NCBI RefSeq assembly: GCF_963853765.1
Contig: NC_088858.1
Span: 6,324,001 to 6,388,000 of the forward strand
DNA length: 64,000 nt
From: Magallana gigas
Lineage: Eukaryota
Direction: 5' to 3'
How positions within the stretch are numbered: position 1 is the first letter of the stretch; each line of letters starts with the position of its first letter. The position numbers and the translations under genes are program-made. The notes beneath the pieces are model-generated. The model searched no databases, was not told where the DNA came from, and saw only the letters and a program-made list of their open reading frames with translations. This document shows, piece by piece, positions 41,641-58,132 of this stretch.

Positions 41641-42504
41641 GGCAACAGTTTGAATTCCAGCAAGCCATTTCCTGATAATAAAGCTTTTCTAAATAATAAA
41701 ACAGTAGTGAAGGAGGTGCACGGCTATACACGCAATGTTGTTATAAATATTCTAGAAAAGCTCTTTGCACGTGGTAAGAATGAAGATGGAAAGACATTGC
41801 ATTTTTTACTCTATGGAATAGAGCGTATAGCAGCAAGGAAATATGCATTAAGACTTGCCTTTCAATAGGTTAAAGGAAAACTCTTCTAATTCCATTATTA
41901 TTACCAAACAAACAATCAAACAAAAGGAGATGCTTTCATGTGACAAAAATATTGATTCTCTTGACCTTAGTCTTTGATATCTTCTTAACTTAATCTCCAT
42001 GCAAATTAAATAATCGTGGACATTAGAAGAGCTAAATTCATCTTAACAGCTATATACGTGAATGTTCATTTTTCTGGCATGACATTATCATTTTTTTGTT
42101 ATCGAAAAAAGAGCAATGCCTGTCAAAAAATAAGTGTGAGAGAATGGTTTAAGATCTGGAAGAGAACAGTTGGGCTAACTGTGCTGGAACCCCGCACGTT
42201 AGTGGAGTATGTGAGATATCGGACTAGCTGTGCTGGTTTTCCGCACGTCATTGTCGATGTCATATTTTTAAAGATATCAGTTAATCAAGAATTTCAAAGT
42301 AGTACAAGTTACATTAAAAGACGCTTTTTTATGTAAAACTAAAATCATTTTTTTTTATCAATTCACTATAGTATTCACAATTCACAATTAACCATGGCAA
42401 ATAGTCAACACATTTTTGAAAATAAAACAATGAATAATCAACACTTACAGTAGTCTTATTATTTATATTGCACTTCATCACAGTATAAAAAAGTGTTAAA
42501 ATGT

Positions 42505-44128
42505 TCAGGCATATAAAGACATAAGGTGCTTTCGCTTATCAATTCCTATGTTCCCTCCACAAGCAACCACAACTACTTTCTTCCCGCTGAATCTCTCGGG
42601 GTTCTTCATGTAGGCACCAAGTGTCATGCCAGCCGCTCCTTCCACAACCTGATGGAACCAGAGCAAGATTGTGTTGAAAATTAAAAAGAAAACATCAATA
42701 GCATCAAACTAACAAGAATGTCCGAAATATTAAAGAACAGTCCACAAGCGAACATATTTGTAGGAAACATTAATATCTCTGACCAAGATGTCCATATTAT
42801 AGAAGCATAGGTAATCAAAGATTACAGAGCTTATATCACCCACATGAAGCGAACCCAACATCGCCCCCTTTTCTGAATATTAGATGGAGAGAGGATCAAT
42901 TCTTACCTTACAACCCTCACCCCTACCCAAACGATAGACCCATCTTGTGGTGATGTTGTAACATGAAGATTATGGCTTTCCCTATTTCCTCCTCATCAAC
43001 CAAAATCCAGTCATCCACGTATTCAGCACAAATAGGAAAAGTAATCTACATGAAGAAATATAGGAAACAGAGCGTATCTTTCAAATTCAAAATGAATATA
43101 ATACAATACACACTATAAACTGCATGCTACCGAGTTTTTGTCTACTCCTCCAGAAGTTCCGTCAGACAGCGTGTCCAGGGATTCTTTAAACACCCCCCTG
43201 CCTGCCTTCACACTCTCGTACATCACTTTGGAATTCTTGGGCTGCCATCCTATTATCTACAAACAATGGCTGGATTTAAAATTATGAATTTATGTATTCA
43301 TAAACGTTACTGAAATAAAGATGACTTCTACTTACTTCTACAGATGTTCGGACTTGTTTGACGTATCTGGATATTCCAGATAACAAGCTTCCGCCCTCCG
43401 ACAGGAACTAAAATACAGCCAACATCAGGACAGCTCTCTAAAATCTCTATTCTGTAAAATTTTATTTAAAAGATCACTTGCATATCATTTTATTGAATTG
43501 AACCTTTTAAGCCTTTTCAAAGCTTTTTATTACATTTGCTGTTTTCCAGAACAGCACGTGAACTTTTTACACATGTTTTATTGCAAACTCGTTTTTGAAG
43601 GAATTTTTTTACAGTAATCAGTACACACCTTGAGGTTGTTCTTCATATCATGACTTGTTAATTGCCGCAGTATTTCCAAGTATATTGAGTATTAAATCAA
43701 CATATATCTGTTATGGATCAAAATTCATTGAATCTGGGGCTATTATGGATCGGATACCTTAATAAGGCCTTTGATAGTACACAGTTTACTACAGAACAAC
43801 TTGCCCAACGGTTCCACAGCCAGCTATGATATCTACGTCATTGTATGATGACACAAATTCTTTTTGCTCCCTCTAGATAAATATAAACAAAAAAGATTAT
43901 GATAATTATTCTGATTTTCTAGTATTCAGTATGTTTCTGCATCTTTTGGCACCAATACACGTGGTTCACCTTTGCGTCGGCTCTAGCCTCGTTTTCAGCC
44001 TCCACATAGTCGTTTCCACGTAGCACCACTTGAACCCCTCTGTCCAGGAGAGCCTGCTTCTTGTGTTCGTCCACACATTGCCTACAGTATACAGTCAATG
44101 GAATACTCAAGGTCCCTCTGGCTTCAAC
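42505..44128 (-). pseudogene. Tandem partial duplicate (exons 3-8) of the dehydratase gene, pseudogenising
   Basis: Exon-by-exon homology with 45289-47512, including the 3' UTR. It has a +1 insertion in the GGGG loop exon (about 43395), a GC exon-4 donor, and an exon-7 donor GT changed to AT (about 42942). No copies of exons 1-2 found. Confidence 0.85.
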
Positions 44129-45288
44129 CTGTTAAACAAATATATTGGTTTTGGGATAAGATCTGAGGCAACTTGTTATAGAGTACACTGTTAGATAGCT
44201 GTTATGCTTTTGATCCGTTCACGAAAATTACTTTACATTGTAAAAGCTTTACACTAGCAGGTCGCAGGATCTAAGAGTTCTCAAAGCAAGTTCGCTAGAA
44301 ATATTAGGATTTCATTCCAGTTATTCTTTTATCAATAAATGATACTCGTTTCTTCACTGATTTTAAGATAATTTTCAAACTAATACATTTAAACTTTAAT
44401 TGTTGTAAACCATTTCATAATTAGTATCAATATCAGACAAAAACAGATTAGTTGTACTGTCCTTGGGTGTTCCCACTGATGTCCACCTCTTGATCGTCAT
44501 ATACATTGTATAGGCCTATACAACTGTCTCCAAAATGTCTTATGCCATCCAATATTTCCGCAGAGTTTTTATTTTTAGATAGAAAGGCGTTTCAAAGGTA
44601 AAATCTTGGGATTGTTTTACACATTTATGAATGAACATCGTTTTAACCCATGGGTAATTATGAATATCAAATAATTTATGAAAATATTGCATAAATATCT
44701 TAAGACAGTAAAATCATGTGCATAGCATTGTATAAATGTTGATGTGCCTGCCTTTCAATCTTGCGTCTATGGTCTATGGGATTCCATTACAGCGGGCACA
44801 GCTCTACACCTTTTTCCGGGGATGATGGCTCCTCCTCCAGATCTATTCCTGATATGAAGACATCAGTGACTTTGGATGAAAGGTGTCCTCACTTCTGGAC
44901 GCCAAGAATGCCGTTCACTGGTGAGCAAATGGTTTCGCATTGTTTTGTCCGAGACGTATTCCAATAGATACCGATATCTTAGTTCAGACAGTCTAGAGAT
45001 TCCTGATTCTGATATTTGTGTTATTTATTTATTTAAATAAAACTAATAACTTTTAGAGGATACAGCTTATAGAGGAATTAGAGGATACTGATGGGTTATA
45101 AAGGTCAAGTAATTCATGTAAGTTTAATAGCCAGTTTTTGAAGACAAAACTAAGAACATTTTATTCTTTTATTTTTTAAACATGGCAAATAGTCAACATA
45201 CATTTATGAAAAAAAAATAATCAACAGTAGTCTTATCATTTATATTGCACTTCAGCACCAATATAAAAAATAAAGTGTGTTAAAATGT

Positions 45289-48200
45289 TCAGGTATATAA
45301 AGACATAAGGTGCTTTAGCTTTTCGATTCCTATGTTCCCTCCACAAGCAACCACAACTACTTTCTTCCCGCTGAATCTCTCGGGGTTCTTCATGTAGGCA
45401 CCAAGTGTCATGCCAGCCGCTCCTTCCACAACCTGATGGAATCAGAGAAAAATTGTTTTAAAAATTTATAAAAAACAATAGCATGGAATTCAAAATAATG
45501 ATTACCGTAATTAAATAAATGGTATTTGCATTCATGCATTTGGGAATCTTGATCCCAACTTTAATATAACTTCAGTATTTAGAATAAAATTTGGTTTATT
45601 TCAATAATTCTAATCTATTGATCTATTCATTTCAAAATTTTGGACAGATAGGTGCTGCCCACTACTTATGAACTTTTGAGGGAAAGGCTCAACTCATATT
45701 TCACAACCCCTTATCCCTACCAAAACAATAGACCCACCTTGTGGTGATGTTGCAACATGAAGATTATGGCTTTCCCTATTTCCTCCTCATCCACCAAAAT
45801 CCAGTCATCCACGTATTCAGCACACAGAGGGAAAGTGATCTAAATAGGGAAATATCAGATAAAAAATCTCCCTTTAAAACAAATACATGTAATATAGAAG
45901 ACAAAACAAACTATAAATAGAATGCTACCGAGTTTTCTTCTACTCCTCCAGCTGTTCCTTCTGACAGGGTGTCTAGAGATTCTTCAAGCACGATCCTGCC
46001 TGCCTTCACACTCTCAAACATCACTTTGCTATTCTGGGGTTGGCATCCTATTATCTACGATAAAAGATTAAACTACTGTTACAAAAGGATTGTGACTGGT
46101 TTTATACTGAAAATAAAGAAAATTACTGAAAATATGAGAATATTATTGAAGAAAAAGAGATAAAATGGAAAACAAAAAGTTAAAAAGGTTCCCAGTGACC
46201 TCTACAGAAGGTCGGACTTGTTTGACATATCGGGCTATTCCAGATATCAATCCTCCACCTCCAACAGGAACTAAAATACAGTCAACATCAGGACAGCTCT
46301 CTAGAATCTCTTTCCTGTAAGAATATTTAAGATTATACAAGCTTATATTAATACTACGTTACACATAAATTCCTTGATATTTAAAGATTTTAATACGTAA
46401 AATTTTGGATGTACATGTAGAACATTTCTTGAGCTTATCAAAGTTTTTATATATGTAGTCAAAATGCTAGTAAACAGAATTTTTTTTATTGATAATCAAC
46501 ATATGACAGAAGAATGTTTTAATCAATGACAGGCTACTAATTAGACACTTGTGCATTTTAAGGTTGTTCTTGACACACAAAAAAATTGTTTGGTTTGAAA
46601 ATGAATATAATAAAAACTTAGACAAAATTCTTAAGAAATCTTTGGAAAATTTTGCAATTAAAACAAATTCTTTTATAAAGAATATTTCAAATTGATTTCA
46701 TGTCCTTCAAATTGTTTCATAGTTTAAAAATGTAACAATACATGTACAAAATGACACAAGTGTTTGAATGAATTTATTTCTACATAAATCTTTTATTTAC
46801 AATCTGATTATTTTAGAAGTTTCAAAGAAGGTATTTTATTTCATGCCTCAATAGCCACAAATGGTAGTCATGAGGAAAAATACATGTATATAGGGAATTT
46901 GCTATGCTTATTATTATGAATTTGTTGTATGGAAATAAAAAATTATGGGTATAGTGAAGTAAATCTAGTGGTCCCTAGGACTTCACTATATGTATAACAG
47001 TTTTTTACAGCAAATATATTGTATTTATGTGAAGTAAATCTAGTGGTCCCTAGGACTTCACTACATGTATAACAGAGTTTTACAGCAACTAGATGAATGT
47101 CCTTTAAATTTTCAATTATTAATTGCAAGCAAGTTTTTTAGTCTAAATGAATATTTGAGCTTTATACTGATTTTACAAAGTTTACAATACAACAACTTAC
47201 CCAATGGTTCCTTGGCCAGCTATGACATCTACATCATTATATGGTGACACATATTCTTTTTGCTCCCTCTAGAAAATAAAACAAAGGATTACAAAAATAA
47301 CTCTGATATATTTCATGTTTCTGAATTTTCTGGCATCACTCCACATAGTTTACCATTGCGGCGGCTCTAGCCTCGTTCTCAGCCTCCACACAGTCGTTTC
47401 CGTGTAGCACCACTCGAACCCCTCTGTCCAGGAGAGCCTGCTTCTTGTGTTCGTCCACACCTCGCTGACAGTACACAGTCACCGGGATACCCAGGGTCCC
47501 TCCAGCCTCAACCTGTCAACACCAGTGAAGTTGTGTCAGGGTATGATTTGAGGCAATTTGTAATATATCAAACTGTTAAAATACAGTTGTCAGACTTCCT
47601 TTGAAAGGCACACAAAAAACAATATATAAAGAATACCATATGCTAATCAATGTGGATCTACATGTAATTATAGTCAGACCAAGTTCACAAAAATTGTTAT
47701 GATTTAATATAACATATGTCACCAGGTTAATAGGTGTGTGACTGTCAGTCAATATATCGGGTCTTAATAGCTCAGTGGTTAGAGCGCTAGCACGGTATGC
47801 CAGAGGCCCTGGGTACAAGTCCCTGTTGAGACTTGACTATTCACCACCTGTTACACATATATTACAGGCATGGATCTAGCCCCCCCCCCCCCCATCACCT
47901 TTGGGAAATCTAAATTCATATCAAAATAACCAAAAAAGGCCTTGGTGCCCCCACCCAAAGAAAAACATTCTGGGCCAAAGAATGCATTTCTAGCAGTTCT
48001 CCTTATTCTAATAAATGGGGCATCTTCACTGATTTTAAAATTTATCATCAACATGATCAATGTTCAAACTTGAAGATTATGATTCAGTCGGTGCGAGTAA
48101 ACCATTTTACAAATAGCATCAGAAATATTGAATTTACACAAGCCATGCCATGGTTTCCAGAGGATGCTGTGATTATTCCTGAGTGTTTGACTACGTCTCC

Positions 48201-49064
48201 AGCAGATGACAACTTCAACAGCTTGTTGAAAGCACCACGAATCTTAAATGATCCCGTCAACTGTTCACTTTCTAAAAGGATGAAAAAAATATGCTTTTCT
48301 TAATGCATTGAAGTGAATGCCAAGTTCATCATGTTTGATACTAAGAAATGCTTTAGATGACTTGTGCCTGGTGAAAATTTTTTGGCTCTAGTTCAAATGT
48401 CATCAACTCAGGTTATGTACATGTATCATTTCTATGTAGACATTTGGAGGCATCTCATTTATTCTTTTTTCAGGCATTTCATATTTAAAAATTATCTAGA
48501 TTGATCATTTATATCAAAATTATTGCATATTTAAAATCGAAAGTTATAAAAGGGTTTCATGGAAATGTCTTTTAATTGCTCATGTTATAGGAATTTAATT
48601 CTCATCAATTTTTTTTAAAAAATATGTCTGCTTCAGTATGGTATGGATGAATAATTGTTCTCTCAATGTAATAAACAGACCTACATATAACTGCTGTTTG
48701 ACACAAACTGATCAAAACTCAGAGTCTTATTAAAATGGCGCTAAATCTAATACAACAGAATGCTTACAGGAGAAACAGACAATCAAGGAATGCATACTTT
48801 CAGCAAGGGCATGCATAAAAACAAACAAGACTAAGATATAAACTAAAATTCATAATGTTGACCCACCTGAATCAAAATATTAATTACAGTATAGCAGAGA
48901 GTACATTCCTTAAACAAGATGCAATTAGACATACCCAGTTTGATGAAGACTTTGCAGTCAATGCTTTGTTTACTGAGGGGAATGGAGTAAGTGAGAGGCG
49001 TCTTGTAGATATATTGTTGGATCCTCCCATGTGCTTCCAATGTTCTCTGAACCAAACTTTCCAT
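45289..49064 (-). CDS. PLP-dependent L-threonine/serine ammonia-lyase (fold type II, serine racemase/TdcB family), about 325 aa, 8 exons
   Basis: Exons 49064-48935, 48271-48138, 47512-47354, 47268-47201, 46314-46200, 46054-45929, 45839-45738 and 45432-45289 join in phase. Motifs: TGSFKIRGA (PLP lysine), TASSGNHG, YVSPYNDVDVIAGQGTIG, VPVGGGGLISG, VVEGAAG, CGGNI. Confidence 0.93.
46954..47089. repeat. 75-bp tandem duplication containing a small hairpin
   Basis: GTGAAGTAAATCTAGTGGTCCCTAGGACTTCACT..TATAACAG occurs twice with period 75. Confidence 0.85.
47717..47855 (+). mobile_element. 139-bp solo LTR containing a tRNA-like sequence (Helenus-like TRIM)
   Basis: TGTCAC...GTTACA termini with a 4-bp TSD CATA on both sides. 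Internal A-box TAGCTCAGTGGTTAGAGC and B-box-like GGGTACAAGTCCC. Confidence 0.75.
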
Positions 49065-49553
49065 AGTCTCTCTGTAAGCCGTCAGCTAAAATAGATTTCA
49101 AAAGTATGGTGAACATTGCCAAAAACAACATTACTTGTTATATTTGTATTTGCCTATCTATGGAAATACATGCATATTGGATTGATAATTCTCATTCACA
49201 ATGTAGATTTTAATAAACAGTAGGAAAACTAATTAGTAAATGTAATTCATGTTCTCAAAGACAACAACATAACAGACAGAAATTACACAAAAAGTGATTA
49301 TCATTACCAGCTTGGTATAGTGAACATAATTCATTCTATCATTAATGTTTTTTAATAGTCCTGTTTTTTGACAAAAATTCAGATAATTTTTAACAACAGT
49401 CAACAGTGTCACCAATTAACTGGCAAGAGCTTTCTTAGCAACAGACTACAATTTCAACTTTTGGACAGTGAGCATAAAACCCACCCAAAACTAAATTGTT
49501 CTGTTCCTCTCACTTAAAAGATTTTTTTTGTGTTAATAAAATGTTAACAATAC

Positions 49554-51581
49554 TTATTTTATGGTACTACATGTATTACAAAAATAAATTGGTTTTAATA
49601 GTCTCTTCTGTTTTACTTGTGCATCATAATCTGTAAATGGTGGCTCTGTCTTTATACTGGTAGGATCGCATTCCATGATCTGGGCTTCACTGTGTGTTGC
49701 TACTGCTTCTATCTGCGATGTCTCCCAAGTGGTTGTGGAGCCAGCTATGATAGTAGGCCTATCTACCCTTGAAAATATCAACAATCGGGGGGTAGGTACT
49801 GGATTTACACAGAGCGGCTGGATGATTTGTGTGTCACTTACTCGACGAAGAACATATTCACTAATGCTCTGAACAGGCAAGTGTCCTGCGCCTGTCATTG
49901 TTTGCGAGTCATGCGTACACTTTGATTGAATTGATGCCCCGGTCACTCTTATGGATTGGTTTGAATACACTCGAGACAAGTTGGTGGCTCTGCTCAAAGA
50001 ACTGAAAAATGTGCTTAACTTCTTCTCACCGACTGGGAGATTGCAGTACCACACTGATTCAGAATCTGTGATGTTTTCTTTAGGTCGCTGCCAAAGTCTG
50101 TAGATGAAAAATATTCATCCTTTAAACTTGACCTTTATAACATATCACAATCTAATTAAACTCTTACCTCGCTCTTTGTTATCTGGTTGCCACTCGCAAC
50201 AGAGTGAGATAAAAGGTCTGATTTTAATTCGATTGTATGAGATCATGGACCCCCTCTCAGTTACTACAGTACTGCTCTTTTGCAACAAATTGAAAGAGTA
50301 TGGTATCATAATACAATGACAATTGTTAAATCTTTGATTTAATTATCTACCAAAACACTTCACCATAATGAAGTAAGGTATGATATGAAATTATGACAAT
50401 TGTTTAATCTACGATATAATTATCTACCAAAACACTTTACCAAAATGGATCAATTTGCCCTTCAAGAGAGCAGTATTCCACAGTTATCATAAAAGCATAC
50501 TGTGAAAGTATCATATTTAGCAGGTTCAATATTTGGCAGAAATGATTTTCAGCCAATTAGCGTGGATTTGATTTAGAGCGTTTCAGCATGTACCTATTTA
50601 CCTACATGTACTGACAGTATGACATTTGGTGATGTACTTGATATAGCAATTCCAAGCTGCATTCTGCCAAAAACACTAAATACAGTGTCATGAGATTATT
50701 CTACTGGTTTTTCAAAGCTGATCAACTTACTTATCACAGTTTGGATGTAGCTTCGATAAATACATCTCAAAAGAAAGAACTGGGCAATATTTGGATCCTG
50801 CAAAAAAAAAAAAAAAATTATAGTGCTCTATAGTCACAAATGATCTAATTTAAGAAATTTTCTGACTCAATTCAAAATTAAAATATAACCAACAATATAA
50901 ACCTTGAATTTCTGGCATTATCCCCGAGGAAGCTTCTTTGTTCACATGACAATTTTCTGTGAAATCATTTAAGTTTTTTGTTACAACTTTACGACCAGTA
51001 TTCTCATCTATTTCTACTCTGAATGTATTCTTGGTCATGGTATGCATGTTTTCTATTCCCCTTCGACAGAAAAACATTCGAATGTCAAACTGCACTTTGT
51101 TGAAGAGACCCCGTGGTGTGGCTATAGAAAGGTTATTACTTGTATACAGTAAGCTTAAGTCAGTGTCCGAAATAATAGGGTGATGAACTTCCACCATCCC
51201 CAGTCTTTTGGCTTCAGCTAACACAGCTTTAAAGCAAGTGTTGCTCTCTATAAACAAGGAATCCTTCACTATGTCAATTTTCCTGTTAAAAGGGGGCGAT
51301 TTTAAATATCTGCTGATTCCATGGCGGATCGTCTCCATTGAATTTACTTTGTAGTATGTTCCATCCTCTCTTCGCAAGTCCATGTAAAATCGTCCCAACA
51401 TCTCATCCAGTTTGGCATTGTCAAATTCTTCAAAATTCTTACTTTCGCCTTGTACCTGTAGATAATCTTTAAAAATCTTTGCAGCACCTTTGTTTGCTTT
51501 TAATGTTTTCTTGCTGTTTATTTGCATACGTTTTTTATCCCTCTCCTCCGCAGAGGTTTGAGCGAACCTGGACGCTGCCAT
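49554..51581 (-). CDS. Crypton/DUF3504-type tyrosine-recombinase-like protein, 3 exons (about 429 aa if unspliced after exon 3)
   Basis: Exons 51581-50903, 50797-50731 and 50097-49554, with GT-AG junctions in phase. Motifs: LGRFYMDLRREDGTYYK, FFCRRGIENM, CPVLSFEMYLSKLHP, LWQRP, VWYCNLPVG, YSNQSIRVTG, AGHLPVQSISEY. The 3' end is uncertain. Confidence 0.85.
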
Positions 51582-52313
51582 TCAATCTGTTGCAGACACA
51601 AAGGGACACTACTCCAGTTTATCAAATATTACGGAACGCGGTTTCCGTAATAAATGTTTTGTTTGGTCAGTTTTAGTAGCCGAAAGGAAAACGGTTACGT
51701 TAGATAATTGAATTCAATAAAATTGTTTTTTTGTGAAATCAAGAATATATAAATCACATTTGAACCGTTGAAAGTTTTAAATTCAAGTTTTTATAAATAT
51801 ATTTCTTTCAATTCAATTCAGTTCATCGACATCATCATGTTGGCACTGTATACTCACTACAGTCAAATGAAATCAAATGACAGACAAAAGAATATTATAA
51901 CAAAAAGGTTATTAACATAAAGGTTATTATATAGTTATAGACAAACCAATGATACAGAAGTCAAGAGTAGAATGCTTTTTGGTGTTTTAATTCGGTCTTT
52001 GTCAGTCAACATTGTTATAACATCGGGAAACCACAATTATCTAATTATACCTGATTATACTCTGATTATACAGAGACACTTGCCTTAGATTATGACCGGA
52101 TATAGCCTATACAAAAACCAAACAACGCCTTCGGCAATAACATCCTGAATAATGCAGCCCATAACGCATGTACGTTACGCCGGTCGCCGGGAACTTGAAA
52201 ACAACTTGAACGCACCAATTCACGCAACTGAACAAACGTTCAAGCATCACGTGTTCGCGAATACAAGACATCACGATGTTTAGATCTGTTGCTGTTCCGA
52301 ACAATATAGATTG

Positions 52314-52437
52314 AATGATTTATTTTTGACGTCGTCGTGTCAATAATTAACTGCCGTCAGGTGATGAGCAGACAAATTGAATAACGCGCGTTAGCTGACG
52401 GCAGTTATTGACACGACGACGTCAAAAATAAATCATT
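52314..52437. repeat. Inverted repeat with about 43-bp arms and 34-bp spacer
   Basis: AATGATTTATTTTTGACGTCGTCGTGTCAATAA(TTAA)CTGCCGTCAG ... CTGACGGCAGTTATTGACACGACGACGTCAAAAATAAATCATT. Confidence 0.88.
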
Positions 52438-53800
52438 TAATGCTTATATTTACATTCCCTTACTGATGAAATCAATTGTTTAGAAATAAATCGATATAAA
52501 GTGCAGATCACGGAGGGAGTAAATTAGTAACAGCAAGAACAGCTGATTTGTAAAACCGGTTTAAACTGGTTTTCCCAGGGACCGTTGAGCATGAAAATAT
52601 AATCCATAACTATTGAAATGTTGCTTTTAACAATAAAGTCAACTGTTTTGTTGAATAATTATAAAACATGGTGTTTTGACAACATTTATGAAATACATTT
52701 TTAACCGATAACATAGAAATCACTGTTTGAGAACTAATTATGTAAATTACATGTAAATTCATACGCAGTGAATAGATGTTGCATTTAGAGGCATTTAAAC
52801 ATCACGGAATCTAATGGAAAAACACAGTAGAATGTAAATATTTTTGATTTGACAGACCACCACAGTTCCGCAGGCATATTTCGTTTCTGGAATCAAAGAA
52901 AATTAAAGTTCCAGGCACAGTGATAGTGTACATGTATTTTACTACAGATGTCGTTGCTTTCCTTGCCACTGAAAGTCTTTTGATTGTTGCTATATTATAA
53001 AATACTTAAAACACTTACTCTAAAACTTACATGTACATTTACTTTCTTTCCCCAGTGTGCTTTGTTATAATTGGTAGTTATAGTGATCTGACGTGAACTT
53101 TCACTTAATAATTTAGGGGTAGGTGAAGGTATATTACAGCAATAAGATGCTTTCTTTTTTGGTGTTTCATGCCGATATGAAGGTAACAGACTGGAGAAAA
53201 AAATCCGCTTACGTCAGTGCTCTCATTGTAGCTTTAGTTTCGATTGATCAAGAATAATCCACACAACGGTCAACAGTTAAAGTACAAAGAAGACATCAAT
53301 GAACGAGTTAAAAATCATTTATCATAGCTACTATAGATAGAATTAAATTTGTCATTTAACAACGCCAGTTTAGAATGCGTAATATTATTCTTACGCCGAC
53401 TGCTGGATCGCGTGAATTTCTGTCTTATCATCGACTATCGTAGAAAAAAAATATAGAGAAAAACTACTTACATGTAATGGATGTCAAAATATTAAATTTA
53501 AGAGTTAGTCTTAGTCAAATAAAGAAATAAGTTCAGTAGCCATGTATGTTTAATGAATCATTCCGTATCATTTTTAAAACTTATGAATCCAAATTTCCAC
53601 GAAGAGCAACAGATCTGCAGCTAAACTTCCTGCAATACACTGGTTGTAGCGCAAAATCGAACATACCCAACTTCGCAAAAACGCAGTCGCGCAAGACGTC
53701 GCTGCGTTGTCATTGCACACAACGCCAAGTGGTACGAGCGCAATGGCGTGTTCTGTGATTTGTGACAGCGTGTTTTCCTCAACTATTGAAAGCACTACTC

Positions 53801-53871: not shown

Positions 53872-54301
53872 GCACTACTCGTTCACCATACTTTAAAAGG
53901 CTTTTTTAGACCGTCGACGACTTGACAGGGACGAGTTGTCTATAGATATACTTTTAAAAGCCGCCGCTGCGCCTCGTTTATGAATCCAAAACAAAGTGCT
54001 ACATTTCATTTCTACTGTCTGTCTTACGGTGTGTAGTCACATGTCGTCGAAGTTCCTGTCACTTACCTAAAAAAGATAGCAATATACAAACCTGCTGCTC
54101 TGTCTATATCACCCGCAACGATCAGATACCTATGTACACTAAAACTTTTAACTAGAGGCCCATGGTCCACATCACTCATGTGGTAGCAGTGTACATAACT
54201 AGCTTTATATACAATTTATCAAAACATTGAGAAATGTTCAGTTGCATTTTGATATTTTAAAAAATGCACATTTGTGAAATTTTTTTTATATGATCTACGA
54301 A

Positions 54302-56626: not shown

Positions 56627-58132
56627 CTACATACTTAATTGTAAAGCATCAGATAAAATACATCTACAGCTCTGTGGTATGTCAAGCTTGATGATATTCT
56701 GCAAGCTTTTTTCAACATACTCCAAATTGACATGTTTGATAAGTATTAAGCACTGGGTACTCAGCTCCTCTAAAGTATGTACAAGTTCAAAGTCATACAT
56801 TTCCTTGGATGAAATGTCAATTAGCAATCTGACCAAGACTTTCAAAATGAAATCCACATAACGAGACATTCGTGGCCATGTGGCAATGATCACTGATTTC
56901 ATCAGTCTTAAAATCTGTGGTTTAGCAGAATGTCTTTTTCCATCATAACTCTCTAAGTATTCTTCAATCACTTTGAAGAGAAGGTTTGTGTGTCGTAGGG
57001 TAAGAAGGCCTAGTTTTTCCACAAAATGAGTTAAGTATCCAGTAAGAGACATACGCAATGCCAAGTTCTGCTCCCCATAAGCATCTGCAAGAATAGTGTG
57101 AAATATCTCATCATACTTGTTTGGCACTCGCATGAGTCCCTTCGAATCAGTGCAGTACTGGGGATCTTTTTCAACCACTGATAATATATAAAGTAATGCA
57201 GGATGCAAAACATCAATTAGTTTTGCTTCTCTAGTATACATTTGATGTTTCAAAGCCTCATAAATGACATCCGCCTGTCCATACCAGCGCAGTTCTTCCC
57301 TGCTCGTGTTTTGCATGATGTGATAGAGACAGCTGACACCTAAGATCTTGTTTTCCAAAACATGATCATCCGTAAACAGAAGAGCGGTAGGAAGGAACTT
57401 TGGGAAGACTTCACTCATGTTTGGAAACCTTGTATTGGAAACACACCATTTATACACCATTTTGAGGGAAGGAAAGCACACCCATGTGTCTCTTTTAAGC
57501 TTTTCACTGAGGTGTTTTTGAATATGTACCAAAATGGATGACAGATGGTTTTGTGAAATCTGGTACTGCAGAAGTTCTTCATTGCCACTTACTGAGAGTA
57601 CGTCCTTGACCTTTCTAAGCACTTCTTTTGACAAAGAAAGTGATGATTTTGATGTCCACAAATTGGGCTGCTCATGTTCAATCACCAAAATTAAAAGATG
57701 TGGTAAAGCTCCTGCAACCAGATGTTTCACGTTATCCTCGTCAGTATCTAAGGACAGTAAAGAACAAACTAATTCTAATACGAACTCTGCTCTTTCAGGT
57801 AAATTTCCCACATCCTCCTTGTCACATGGCTTATGTTCAAGTTCTTTAATGCACGGAACACATGCACGGCCAATCAAATGCTGCAACTTTTCTTTGACGT
57901 TTGATGATTTTAATATTTCACAAAAGTAGTCTTCTAACCACTTTTCTGGAGCAATTTTGATTAATTTTGTAATTCTCTTTATATTTGTAGGAAATTCTTT
58001 GTCTGGAAGGTCTCCTACTACTTCAATTAACTTCCCAAGGCTGTTTGCTGACCTGGAGAAAATGAGGTCCTGAAGTTTGGTGTAGTCATTTTCTGAAACA
58101 AGGCTTTCAAGCACAGCTTTGGCAGATGACAT
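56627..58132 (-). CDS. TTI2: TELO2-interacting protein 2 (TTT complex), 501 aa, single coding exon
   Basis: Open 501-aa ORF with LPTALLFTDDHVLENKILGVSCLYHI and WYGQADVIYEALKHQMYTREAKLI, matching the recalled TTI2 core. Acceptor about 25 bp upstream of the ATG and a UTR donor near 59030. Confidence 0.88.
   Translation of the reverse strand: MSSAKAVLESLVSENDYTKLQDLIFSRSANSLGKLIEVVGDLPDKEFPTNIKRITKLIKIAPEKWLEDYFCEILKSSNVKEKLQHLIGRACVPCIKELEHKPCDKEDVGNLPERAEFVLELVCSLLSLDTDEDNVKHLVAGALPHLLILVIEHEQPNLWTSKSSLSLSKEVLRKVKDVLSVSGNEELLQYQISQNHLSSILVHIQKHLSEKLKRDTWVCFPSLKMVYKWCVSNTRFPNMSEVFPKFLPTALLFTDDHVLENKILGVSCLYHIMQNTSREELRWYGQADVIYEALKHQMYTREAKLIDVLHPALLYILSVVEKDPQYCTDSKGLMRVPNKYDEIFHTILADAYGEQNLALRMSLTGYLTHFVEKLGLLTLRHTNLLFKVIEEYLESYDGKRHSAKPQILRLMKSVIIATWPRMSRYVDFILKVLVRLLIDISSKEMYDFELVHTLEELSTQCLILIKHVNLEYVEKSLQNIIKLDIPQSCRCILSDALQLSM

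What the first reader, a model, noticed from the sequence alone, without database searches (positions are those of the whole stretch)
49554..51581. Intact spliced Crypton-type tyrosine-recombinase gene with substituted catalytic residues: candidate domesticated transposase
Seen: three exons join in phase through canonical GT-AG sites, with no stop or frameshift over about 429 codons. Against the recalled Crypton/DUF3504 layout (RRGxEN...TKNH...TNHSIRAT...GHKS...Y), R, the second R, H and the nucleophilic Y are kept (RRGIEN, SIRV, AGHLP, SISEY). The catalytic K reads E (FTENC) and HxxR reads QxxR (SNQSIR). Known: vertebrate ZMYM2/3/4, QRICH1, KCTD1 and KIAA1958 derive from Crypton recombinases. 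Inference: an open frame with eroded catalysis, no clear element termini, and a MITE-like fragment in intron 2 (about 50489-50590) fit an old, possibly host-co-opted gene better than an active transposon.
Basis: partly seen in the sequence, partly recalled or inferred. Interest (0 to 1): 0.78.

Follow-up and report, generated by a model that had tools for sequence, protein, structure and literature searches.

The report
Oyster Crypton recombinase fused to dehydratase
A single-copy, catalytically altered Crypton transposon recombinase in the Pacific oyster is spliced in frame onto the neighbouring serine/threonine dehydratase gene, and selection has kept it, so it is a young example of a host gene capturing a transposon protein.

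Summary
RNA contigs from four studies confirm both junctions.

The gene does not end at 49554. A donor after codon 409 (49617) splices to an acceptor at 49085, 21 nt upstream of the ATG of a TdcB-like PLP dehydratase. The result is an 11-exon, 741-aa in-frame fusion. NCBI lists it only as an "uncharacterized protein" in Magallana gigas and M. angulata.

The Crypton-derived gene lies inside the dehydratase's 5'UTR intron. Host-only transcripts also exist, starting from a non-coding exon at 54092-54126.

This copy is unique in the genome. Its nearest relative (about 73% aa identity over exon 1) is a young 2.19-kb Crypton with canonical residues, 98-99% identical copies and over 100 short derivatives.

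A second oyster lineage (dS 0.20) carries the same fusion. dN/dS is 0.13 for the N-domain, 0.28 for the catalytic remnant and 0.08 for the enzyme.

Verdict: a domesticated Crypton module captured by splicing. Its function is unknown. The scan's note s1-375724 had proposed the fusion on this same stretch.

The parts
54092..54126 (-). Non-coding first exon of the host dehydratase gene. Only its 3' part is seen. A GT donor lies at 54091-54090. It is spliced to the acceptor at 49085 in host-only transcripts.
   Evidence: RNA contigs L055 and L056 carry this sequence joined to exon 4. It has a unique exact match in the window. The donor was read and the mapping is.
50903..51732 (-). Exon 1 of the fusion mRNA. 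The 5'UTR reaches at least 51732. The ATG is at 51581 with an in-frame TGA just upstream. It encodes codons 1-226: the N-terminal (QRICH1-like) domain and the start of the catalytic domain, including RRGIEN (R174) and TENC (E209 at 50955-50957).
   Evidence: (the X16 contig reaches 51732). Pfam QRICH1 domain E 3e-5.
50798..50902 (-). Intron 1 (105 nt, GT..AG, poly-T tract). The same intron is present in the young paralogous elements.
50731..50797 (-). Exon 2 (67 nt), encoding GSKYCPVLSFEMYLSKLHPNCD.
50098..50730 (-). Intron 2 (633 nt, GT..AG). It is enlarged relative to about 80 bp in the paralogues. It holds a dispersed MITE-like repeat at about 50481-50682 and a local duplication of about 75 bp at about 50310-50440.
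49617..50097 (-). Exon 3 as used in the main mRNA (481 nt, codons 249-409). It carries the rest of the catalytic domain: Q296 at 49956-49958, R299, H321 and Y330 at 49854-49856. A disordered linker follows. The exon ends at the donor CAA|GTAAAA.
   Evidence: (joint 49617 to 49085 in X15, X16 and X20).
49554..49616 (-). It is the remnant of the ancestral recombinase C-terminus and is intronic in the main mRNA.
   Evidence: It is covered only by low-depth contigs (4.4 and 6.7), at the same level as the contig lying inside intron 2. It carries 3 non-synonymous and no synonymous polymorphisms in codons 410-429.
49086..49616 (-). Intron 3 (531 nt, GT..AG), which joins the recombinase-derived part to the host gene. 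It holds a marginal remnant of the ancestral element's 3' palindrome at about 49122-49195.
   Evidence: (E 0.003, weak).
48935..49085 (-). Exon 4, the host gene's ATG exon. The acceptor is at 49085 and the host ATG at 49064. The 21 nt before the ATG are translated as the linker LTAYRET in the fusion.
45209..48271 (-). Exons 5-11 of the dehydratase: 48271-48138, 47512-47354, 47268-47201, 46314-46200, 46054-45929, 45839-45738 and 45432-45209. The stop codon ends at 45289. They encode a complete PALP domain with the SFKIRG lysine motif.
   Evidence: (PALP E 1.4e-70).

Best explanation
This is a domesticated CryptonA tyrosine-recombinase gene captured by a host gene through splicing.

Inferred origin: a Crypton of about 2.2 kb inserted, in the sense orientation, into the 5'UTR intron of a TdcB-like serine/threonine dehydratase gene.

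Shown: transcription starts in the element's own 5' region. The element's two ancestral introns are removed. A donor formed at a Val codon near the end of the old recombinase ORF (after codon 409) splices to the host's exon-2 acceptor, 21 nt upstream of the host ATG. The product is a 741-aa protein: the two-domain recombinase fold (about aa 1-340), a disordered linker (341-416) and a complete PLP enzyme (417-741). The host-only mRNA (325-aa enzyme) still exists.

Shown: the recombinase module has lost the general-acid lysine (K to E) and the tetrad histidine (H to Q). It keeps both arginines, the third histidine and the tyrosine. It is single copy and has evolved under purifying selection since before two oyster lineages split.

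Inferred: the module no longer recombines DNA. It probably serves as a non-catalytic DNA-binding or protein-binding/assembly module that gives the dehydratase a new location, partner or oligomeric state.
For: Gene structure:
- All 11 exons have GT-AG borders, and the reference genome itself gives an intact 741-aa ORF.
- The 49617-to-49085 joint appears in RNA contigs of three studies, and one contig spans exon 1 through dehydratase exon 7, 47268-47196.
- Full-length 741-aa ORFs are assembled from RNA runs (P0196, cluster of 107 members). The same 741-aa model is in RefSeq for M. gigas (XP_011428755.3) and M. angulata (XP_052701477.1).
- Host-only transcripts with a different 5' exon at 54092-54126 show that the element sits in intron 1.

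Domains and fold:
- Pfam gives DUF3504 at 35.6 bits (cut-off 29.7) and PALP at E 1.4e-70. There is no Phage_integrase hit, unlike canonical relatives.
- In the AlphaFold model, residues 1-310 mostly score above 90 pLDDT and 337-400 score below 50.
- The best fold matches are QRICH1 and then Cre.

Transposon origin:
- The module nests with 100/99 support inside a clade that also holds a young 2.19-kb element. That element has canonical TKNH, NHSIR and GHKS motifs and four copies that are 98-99% identical.
- Several sampled loci are deletion derivatives of about 700 bp sharing that element's ends, and over 100 loci in the genome match the same 5' fragment.

Selection:
- Against the orthologue in a second lineage (742 aa, dS 0.20), dN/dS is 0.13 for aa 1-226 (binomial p 7e-8), 0.28 for aa 227-340 (p 0.005), 0.42 for the linker and 0.078 for PALP.
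- All 20 genomic alleles are free of stops and frameshifts across the exons their contigs cover, and the 10 that span all three exons keep the full 429-codon frame.
- In the unbiased part, codons 227-340, there are 5 non-synonymous and 8 synonymous polymorphisms (p 0.002).
- Ten RNA haplotypes show 0 amino-acid variants in aa 1-226 against 9 in the enzyme.
- E209 and Q296 are invariant in every allele and in both lineages.
Against: - No protein-level evidence for the fusion was available.
- Isoform ratios rest on contig k-mer depths, which are a poor measure.
- Only two lineages could be compared, so the age of the capture and selection on single residues (R, R, H, Y) are unknown.
- The species identity of the second lineage is unknown.
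- Nothing tested here shows DNA binding, protein binding or any effect on the enzyme. The functional part of the statement is inference from the fold, the lost residues and analogy with other domesticated Crypton domains.
- H-to-Q alone might be tolerated by a tyrosine recombinase, so loss of activity rests mainly on K-to-E.
Confidence: 0.8

Rival explanations
1. The functional product is the stand-alone 429-aa protein the reader described (three exons, stop at 49554). On this view the splice into the dehydratase is a side product.
For: The 429-codon frame is open in the reference and in the 10 allele contigs that span all three exons; the other 10 cover only exons 1-2. Low-depth RNA contigs run unspliced across the donor at 49617 (X15 49216-49636 and X16 49425-49646).
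Against: - Those unspliced contigs have depth 4.4-6.7, the same as the contig lying inside intron 2 (4.3). The spliced junction contigs have depth 33-89.
- Codons 410-429 carry 3 non-synonymous and no synonymous polymorphisms.
- The family's conserved C-terminal P-x-F-x-N-C motif is degenerate here.
- RefSeq and 100-odd RNA assemblies give the 741-aa form.
- The reading frame across the junction is kept in a second lineage even though 4 of the 7 linker residues differ.
Confidence: 0.07
2. The module is still an active tyrosine recombinase, either as the transposase of a low-copy element or as a host site-specific recombinase. On this view E209 and Q296 are tolerated or compensated.
For: R174, R299, H321 and the nucleophile Y330 are retained in both lineages, and the fold is intact to about residue 310. 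The known old domesticated DUF3504 genes have all lost Y and the second R (PMC3212892), so this one looks less eroded.
Against: - The lysine is K in 46 of 50 family members, and the tetrad histidine is H in 46 of 50.
- There is no Phage_integrase Pfam hit, unlike canonical relatives.
- The segment around H321 is modelled with low confidence.
- The copy is unique in 564 Mb, with no near copies and only marginal remnants of element ends.
- Its position and splice junction are the same in two lineages, so it has not moved.
Confidence: 0.05
3. The fusion is transcriptional noise from a dead transposon lying in an intron. On this view the recombinase-derived residues have no function and the open frame is chance.
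For: Chimeric transposon-host transcripts are common. No functional data exist for this one. So far the fusion is seen only in Magallana.
Against: - dN/dS is 0.13-0.28 with strong binomial support.
- Synonymous-site diversity in exon 1 (about 11%) equals that of intron 1, while non-synonymous diversity is far lower.
- There are no indels in any exon of the 20 alleles, while the introns hold many.
- The frame is preserved across the junction in two lineages.
Confidence: 0.04

Closest known systems
Domesticated Crypton (DUF3504) genes of animals: KCTD1, KIAA1958, ZMYM2/3/4, QRICH1, WOC (Kojima and Jurka 2011, PMC3212892)
   Same: - It is a Crypton tyrosine-recombinase domain kept by the host as part of a larger protein.
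- Pfam DUF3504 scores above its cut-off, and a QRICH1-type N-domain is present.
- The best solved-structure match is QRICH1 (9hjt_H).
- The catalytic set is incomplete.
   Different: - The known genes are ancient (vertebrate-wide or bilaterian). According to that paper all have lost the tyrosine and the second arginine.
- This one is so far confined to Magallana oysters and keeps R, R, H and Y, having lost only K and the tetrad H.
- Closely related mobile elements are still present in the same genome.
- Its partner domain is a metabolic PLP enzyme, not a zinc finger, BTB or Q-rich region.
- No other DUF3504+PALP protein was found among 5.8 billion sequences.
Host-transposase fusion genes born by transposase capture (Cosby et al., bioRxiv 10.1101/2020.05.07.082677)
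   Same: All three steps of that model are seen here:
- a DNA transposon inserted inside a host gene;
- fusion by alternative splicing while the parental transcript persists;
- selection that maintains the fusion.
   Different: - Those cases are tetrapod DDE-type transposases. They are usually captured through an acceptor upstream of the transposase ORF and placed C-terminal to host regulatory domains such as KRAB.
- Here the transposon protein is a tyrosine recombinase in a mollusc and forms the N-terminus.
- The transposon supplies the promoter and a donor, and the host part is an enzyme.
- Crypton is not mentioned in that paper.
Active CryptonA elements of Crassostrea/Magallana gigas (known from Repbase; diversity noted in PMC13465315)
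   Same: - The three-exon gene structure and intron positions are the same.
- Amino-acid identity is about 73% over exon 1 and about 63% over the conserved part of exon 3 (46% over all of exon 3).
- Both fall in the same well-supported clade.
   Different: - The active family has canonical K and H, copies that are 98-99% identical, defined ends with a 141-bp terminal palindrome, and many short derivatives.
- The window copy has none of these.
Catabolic threonine dehydratase TdcB / serine racemase family (fold-type II PLP enzymes)
   Same: The C-terminal 325 aa match TdcB (2gn0, E 1.6e-56) and serine racemases (E about 1e-41) over their full length. They carry the SFKIRG lysine motif and the SSGNHG and GGGG loops.
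   Different: None of the solved or database relatives carries an N-terminal recombinase-derived module.

Membership tests
Crypton-derived DUF3504 / tyrosine-recombinase fold | Pfam DUF3504 (PF12012) match above the curated cut-off | tested here: met
   P0196 scores 35.6 bits against a cut-off of 29.7, over residues 143-282. Single exons alone scored below the cut-off.
Crypton-derived DUF3504 / tyrosine-recombinase fold | Two-domain tyrosine-recombinase architecture (N-terminal helical domain plus catalytic domain) | tested here: met
   In the AlphaFold model nearly all of residues 1-310 score above 90 pLDDT. Foldseek matches QRICH1 (E 5e-8) and many Cre chains (E about 1e-5, TM 0.47/0.58).
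Crypton-derived DUF3504 / tyrosine-recombinase fold | Phylogenetic placement among transposon-encoded Crypton recombinases | tested here: met
   It sits in a clade with 100/99 support together with the young multicopy element of the same genome.
Active tyrosine recombinase / autonomous Crypton transposon | Complete catalytic set (R-H-R-Y tetrad plus the general-acid Lys) | tested here: not met
   K209 is E and H296 is Q. R174, R299, H321 and Y330 are kept.
Active tyrosine recombinase / autonomous Crypton transposon | Several near-identical dispersed copies with shared ends | tested here: not met
   This copy is unique in the 564-Mb genome, and the next best match is about 73% aa identity over exon 1. 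Its flanks do not match the young element's ends, apart from two marginal hits at E 0.001-0.003.
Host-transposase fusion gene (transposase capture) | Transposon inserted within a host gene, with the fusion made by alternative splicing alongside the parental transcript | tested here: met
   The host's non-coding exon is at 54092-54126 and the host acceptor is at 49085, so the element lies between them. The fusion mRNA (L048) and the host-only mRNAs (L055, L056) use the same acceptor.
Host-transposase fusion gene (transposase capture) | In-frame ORF across the junction that is maintained by selection | tested here: met
   The 741-aa ORF can be read from the reference exons. The frame is kept in a second lineage, and dN/dS is 0.13-0.28 in the transposon-derived part.
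Host-transposase fusion gene (transposase capture) | The fusion protein exists and has a cellular function | not testable with these tools
   No proteomic or functional data could be reached.
TdcB-like / serine racemase-like fold-type II PLP enzyme | Full-length PALP domain with the PLP-binding lysine motif | tested here: met
   PALP scores E 1.4e-70 over profile positions 1-295 of 295. SFKIRG is present. The best solved relative is TdcB 2gn0 at E 1.6e-56.
TdcB-like / serine racemase-like fold-type II PLP enzyme | Dehydratase or racemase activity | not testable with these tools
   This needs an enzyme assay.

The most novel reading that the evidence does not exclude
The fusion would be a mollusc counterpart, in a single polypeptide, of the vertebrate Zincore pairing, in which the Crypton-derived protein QRICH1 partners with the enzyme-like protein SEPHS1 on DNA. 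On this reading the disabled recombinase clamp binds DNA or chromatin, perhaps at sequences derived from the ends of its many Crypton relatives, and carries an amino-acid-metabolising enzyme there. That would link serine/threonine (or D-amino-acid) metabolism to gene regulation or genome defence in oysters.
Probability: 0.1. Interest if true: 0.85.

Novelty: new variant of a known kind. Interest (0 to 1): 0.66.

Why it matters
The known domestications of Crypton recombinases are ancient, and their origin can only be reconstructed. Here the whole path can be read at one locus:
- the parental host transcript still exists;
- the fusion transcript is driven from the element's own 5' region;
- a donor recruited from a codon of the old ORF joins the two genes;
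- two of the six key catalytic residues are already replaced, while the nucleophile and both arginines remain;
- close mobile relatives with intact residues still sit in the same genome.

This extends the transposase-capture route from vertebrate DDE transposases to a tyrosine recombinase in a mollusc. It also pairs the captured module with a metabolic enzyme, an architecture found nowhere else in the databases searched.

It offers a tractable system for asking what a recombinase fold is kept for once catalysis is lost. It also gives a name and origin to a RefSeq "uncharacterized protein" of a major aquaculture species.

Tried and rejected
- **Exon-by-exon Pfam scans** were nearly uninformative: QRICH1 E 3e-5 and DUF3504 E 0.15. 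The domain became clear only on the spliced protein P0196.
- **The search for homologous proteins with the 243-aa exon-1 ORF** could not see the real product because of its length window. An alignment headed by a 482-aa homologue plus the two exon pieces found it.
- **Polymorphism in exon 1** from the 20 genomic allele contigs is biased, because those contigs were picked by their exon-1 protein. For selection I therefore rely on exons 2-3, on RNA haplotypes and on the between-lineage comparison.
- **The stand-alone 429-aa isoform** was rejected as the main product.
- **The Saccostrea echinata protein XP_061190714** (P0307) is 63% identical and shares H-to-Q. It groups with the fusion at 96/94 support. 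However, the alternative topology is not rejected (AU p 0.086). Its locus holds several Crypton fragments, no dehydratase, and no homologue of the window's upstream ORF. It is therefore not shown to be an orthologue. P0307 itself was not on record for a locus look-up.
- **Remnants of the ancestral element ends** gave only two marginal matches, at 51629-51684 and 49122-49195. No convincing palindrome was found.
- **The first sequencing-run run** failed because the machine was busy. It was repeated unchanged.
- **Literature searches** found no paper on this fusion.
Full report
**1. The observation**

The feature lies on the minus strand. The three exons are 51581-50903, 50797-50731 and 50097-49554. 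They join through GT..AG introns into 1290 nt, which is 429 codons plus TAA, with an in-frame TGA just upstream of the ATG.

RNA contigs from four runs in four different studies, under two species labels, skip exactly 105 and 633 nt. One contig has piece lengths of 481 + 67 + 705 nt, which equal the predicted exon parts. A full transcript contig maps to the same borders. So the frame and both junctions are real.

**2. The catalytic residues**

The closest relative in the same genome was aligned directly. It reads RRGNEN, TKNH, TNHSIRAT, GHKS and SLSVY. The window gene reads RRGIEN, TENC, SNQSIRVT, GHLP and SISEY.

In a 50-sequence family alignment:
- position 209 is K in 46 sequences and E here;
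- position 296 is H in 46 sequences and Q here;
- R174, R299, H321 and Y330 are kept.

E209 and Q296 are invariant in all alleles and transcripts examined.

**3. Copy number and relatives**

The genome has 564 Mb in 29 contigs. Contig C6 is 56,905,015 bp long, the same length as the contig that carries RefSeq XP_011428755.3 of Magallana gigas.

The genome holds more than 150 matches to exon 1, but none closer than about 73% aa identity. The closest matches are four dispersed copies, 98-99% identical to each other, of a 2,188-bp element with sharp ends and a 141-bp palindrome at its 3' end. This element has the same three-exon gene with canonical residues and an intron 2 of about 80 bp.

Sampled loci also show elements of about 700 bp that join the first ~510 bp of that element to its last ~190 bp. 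These are non-autonomous derivatives, and they explain the 100-odd matches to codons 1-73. The family is therefore a bona fide, recently mobile CryptonA. The window copy is a unique, diverged member.

The flanks of the window copy no longer match the element ends, apart from two marginal hits in the expected places. Its intron 2 has grown to 633 bp through a dispersed repeat at about 50481-50682.

**4.

RNA contigs of three studies join 49617 to 49085. The skipped 531 nt begin with GT and end with AG on the gene strand. The donor follows codon 409 (..DYDAQ|GTAAAA). The acceptor lies 21 nt upstream of the ATG (49064) of the next gene, and the reading frame is continuous (LTAYRET, then MESLVQ..).

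One contig runs from exon 1 to dehydratase exon 7, 47268-47196. A search with an alignment then recovered P0196, a 741-aa ORF assembled from RNA runs.

Its cluster has 107 members. Among them are XP_011428755.3 (M. gigas) and XP_052701477.1 (M. angulata), both 741 aa and both named "uncharacterized protein". The reference exons themselves give the same 741-aa ORF: 11 exons, all with GT-AG borders, stop ending at 45289.

Pfam and structure comparisons on this protein:
- Pfam gives DUF3504 at 35.6 bits (cut-off 29.7) and PALP at E 1.4e-70. There is no Phage_integrase match, whereas canonical relatives have one.
- The enzyme part is closest to catabolic threonine dehydratase TdcB (2gn0, E 1.6e-56) and to serine racemases.

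RNA running unspliced past 49617 has the same low depth as the contig inside intron 2. The 429-aa form therefore looks like pre-mRNA, not a product.

**5. Architecture of the locus**

Some transcript contigs encode only the 325-aa enzyme. They carry a different 5' exon spliced to the same acceptor. That exon maps uniquely to 54092-54126 and is followed by GT.

The recombinase-derived gene therefore lies, in the sense orientation, inside the 5-kb 5'UTR intron of the dehydratase gene. The fusion mRNA starts in the element's own 5' region; its 5'UTR is contiguous with the genome to at least 51732.

The donor sits on a Val codon that the young element also has (GTT GAA there, GTA AAA here). So the GT itself is probably ancestral, and the surrounding context has changed.

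This matches the three-step transposase-capture model described for tetrapods in bioRxiv 10.1101/2020.05.07.082677: insertion into a host gene, fusion by alternative splicing, then selection.

**6. Selection**

Three cluster members of 742 aa are 93% identical to the M. gigas protein. They come from other RNA runs. There is no such copy in the M. gigas genome, and dS is about 0.2 along the whole gene. They therefore represent the orthologue in another oyster lineage.

dN/dS by the Nei-Gojobori method:

| Region | dN/dS | Binomial p against neutrality |
|---|---|---|
| aa 1-226 (N-domain) | 0.13 | 7e-8 |
| aa 227-340 (catalytic remnant) | 0.28 | 0.005 |
| Linker | 0.42 | 0.04 |
| PALP enzyme | 0.078 | 2e-17 |

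The junction frame is kept although 4 of the 7 linker residues differ.

Within M. gigas, 20 genomic allele contigs are 97.5-99.5% identical. They have no stop and no indel in the exons they cover, while the introns hold many indels; 10 of them span all three exons. Exon 1 of this sample is biased, because the contigs were chosen by exon-1 protein. In the unbiased part:
- codons 227-340 have 5 non-synonymous and 8 synonymous sites (p 0.002);
- codons 341-429 have 6 non-synonymous and 1 synonymous site;
- three of those non-synonymous sites fall in codons 410-429.

Ten full-length RNA haplotypes show no amino-acid variant in residues 1-226, against 9 in the enzyme. Selection acting on alleles of one fixed locus is host-level selection.

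**7. Structure**

In the AlphaFold2 model built on 50 relatives, nearly all of residues 1-310 score above 90 pLDDT. The loop 210-215 next to E209 and the segment 313-322 around H321 score below 50. Residues 337-400 are disordered.

Foldseek's best solved match is QRICH1 in the Zincore complex (9hjt_H), followed by many Cre chains. The fold of a two-domain tyrosine recombinase is therefore retained. The part that carries the third histidine and the tyrosine is less certain.

**8. Mechanism**

Shown: the promoter and splice architecture, the fused ORF, the lost K and H, the single-copy status, and purifying selection.

Inferred: recombination is lost. The lysine is the general acid of this enzyme class according to PMC13465315. 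K-to-E reverses its charge, and the histidine of the R-H-R-Y tetrad is also gone. What selection keeps is then a binding function of the recombinase clamp, towards DNA or towards a protein partner. That function would alter where or how the dehydratase acts. I give the structural and evolutionary reading about 0.9 and the functional reading much less.

**9. Comparison with what is known**

Kojima and Jurka (PMC3212892) described the DUF3504 genes as ancient Crypton domestications. In those genes the tyrosine and the second arginine are always lost. They also predicted, without mRNA evidence, a YR-ATF7IP fusion in birds.

The present case is a much younger domestication and is caught with transcripts. 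Four of the six key residues are still present and mobile relatives are still in the genome. The partner domain is unprecedented: no other DUF3504+PALP protein was found. No paper on this fusion was found either.

The Saccostrea echinata protein that groups with it shares H-to-Q but is not syntenic. An older origin of the inactive lineage is therefore possible but not shown.

**10. Verdict**

This is a new variant of a known kind. It is of real interest to people who study transposon domestication and gene birth. Its cellular function remains open.

Noticed in passing
L025:3546-5733 (G000:C10), L026:3593-5773 (C4), L027:4142-6309 (C9), L028:4140-6225 (C10): A young autonomous CryptonA family. 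The element is 2,188 bp, and four dispersed copies are 98-99% identical. It has a three-exon recombinase gene with canonical residues and a 141-bp perfect-like palindrome at the 3' end. One copy (L028) has a stop in exon 2.
   Followed up: partly
L058:1210-1910, L059:1195-1884, L060:1242-1862, L061:1213-1908: Non-autonomous derivatives of that Crypton, about 700 bp long, made of its first ~510 bp plus its last ~190 bp. The sampled copies are 86-96% identical to each other. Over 100 loci in the genome match the same 5' fragment.
   Followed up: partly
window 42493-44110 (minus strand): A tandem partial duplicate of the dehydratase's 3' exons. ORFs there closely mirror exons 6-11, and the last exon is 98% identical. 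No first exons were seen between 44110 and 45209. It could be a pseudogene or a set of alternative exons.
   Followed up: no
window 50310-50440 and 50481-50682: Intron 2 holds a local tandem duplication of about 75 bp. It also holds a dispersed MITE-like repeat with dozens of genomic copies at 73-78% identity.
   Followed up: partly
L057:9896-17833 (Saccostrea echinata, GCA_033153115.1): The gene model LOC133198711 (1021-1023 aa) is strung together from several Crypton-derived fragments. Its first module has the same three-exon structure, shares H-to-Q, lacks the lysine loop and has Y-to-F. Another DUF3504 gene lies just upstream. The region may be a cluster of inactive or co-opted Cryptons.
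   Followed up: partly
proteins P0035, P0308, P0239, P0238, P0232 (other molluscs): Relatives of the same Crypton clade occur fused to BTB/POZ, to C2H2 zinc fingers, or to DDE_Tnp_4/HTH domains in gene models and RNA assemblies. These are possible further capture events.
   Followed up: no
window 56627-58132 (minus strand): An intronless 501-aa ORF lies upstream of the dehydratase's first exon. It was not characterised and has no homologue in the Saccostrea locus.
   Followed up: no
window 51722-51918 and 52313-52500: RNA contigs of high depth with many loose ends and repeat-like behaviour lie just upstream of the fusion gene's 5'UTR. These are probably expressed repeats. One contig end at about 51907 looks like a plus-strand GT donor.
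   Followed up: no
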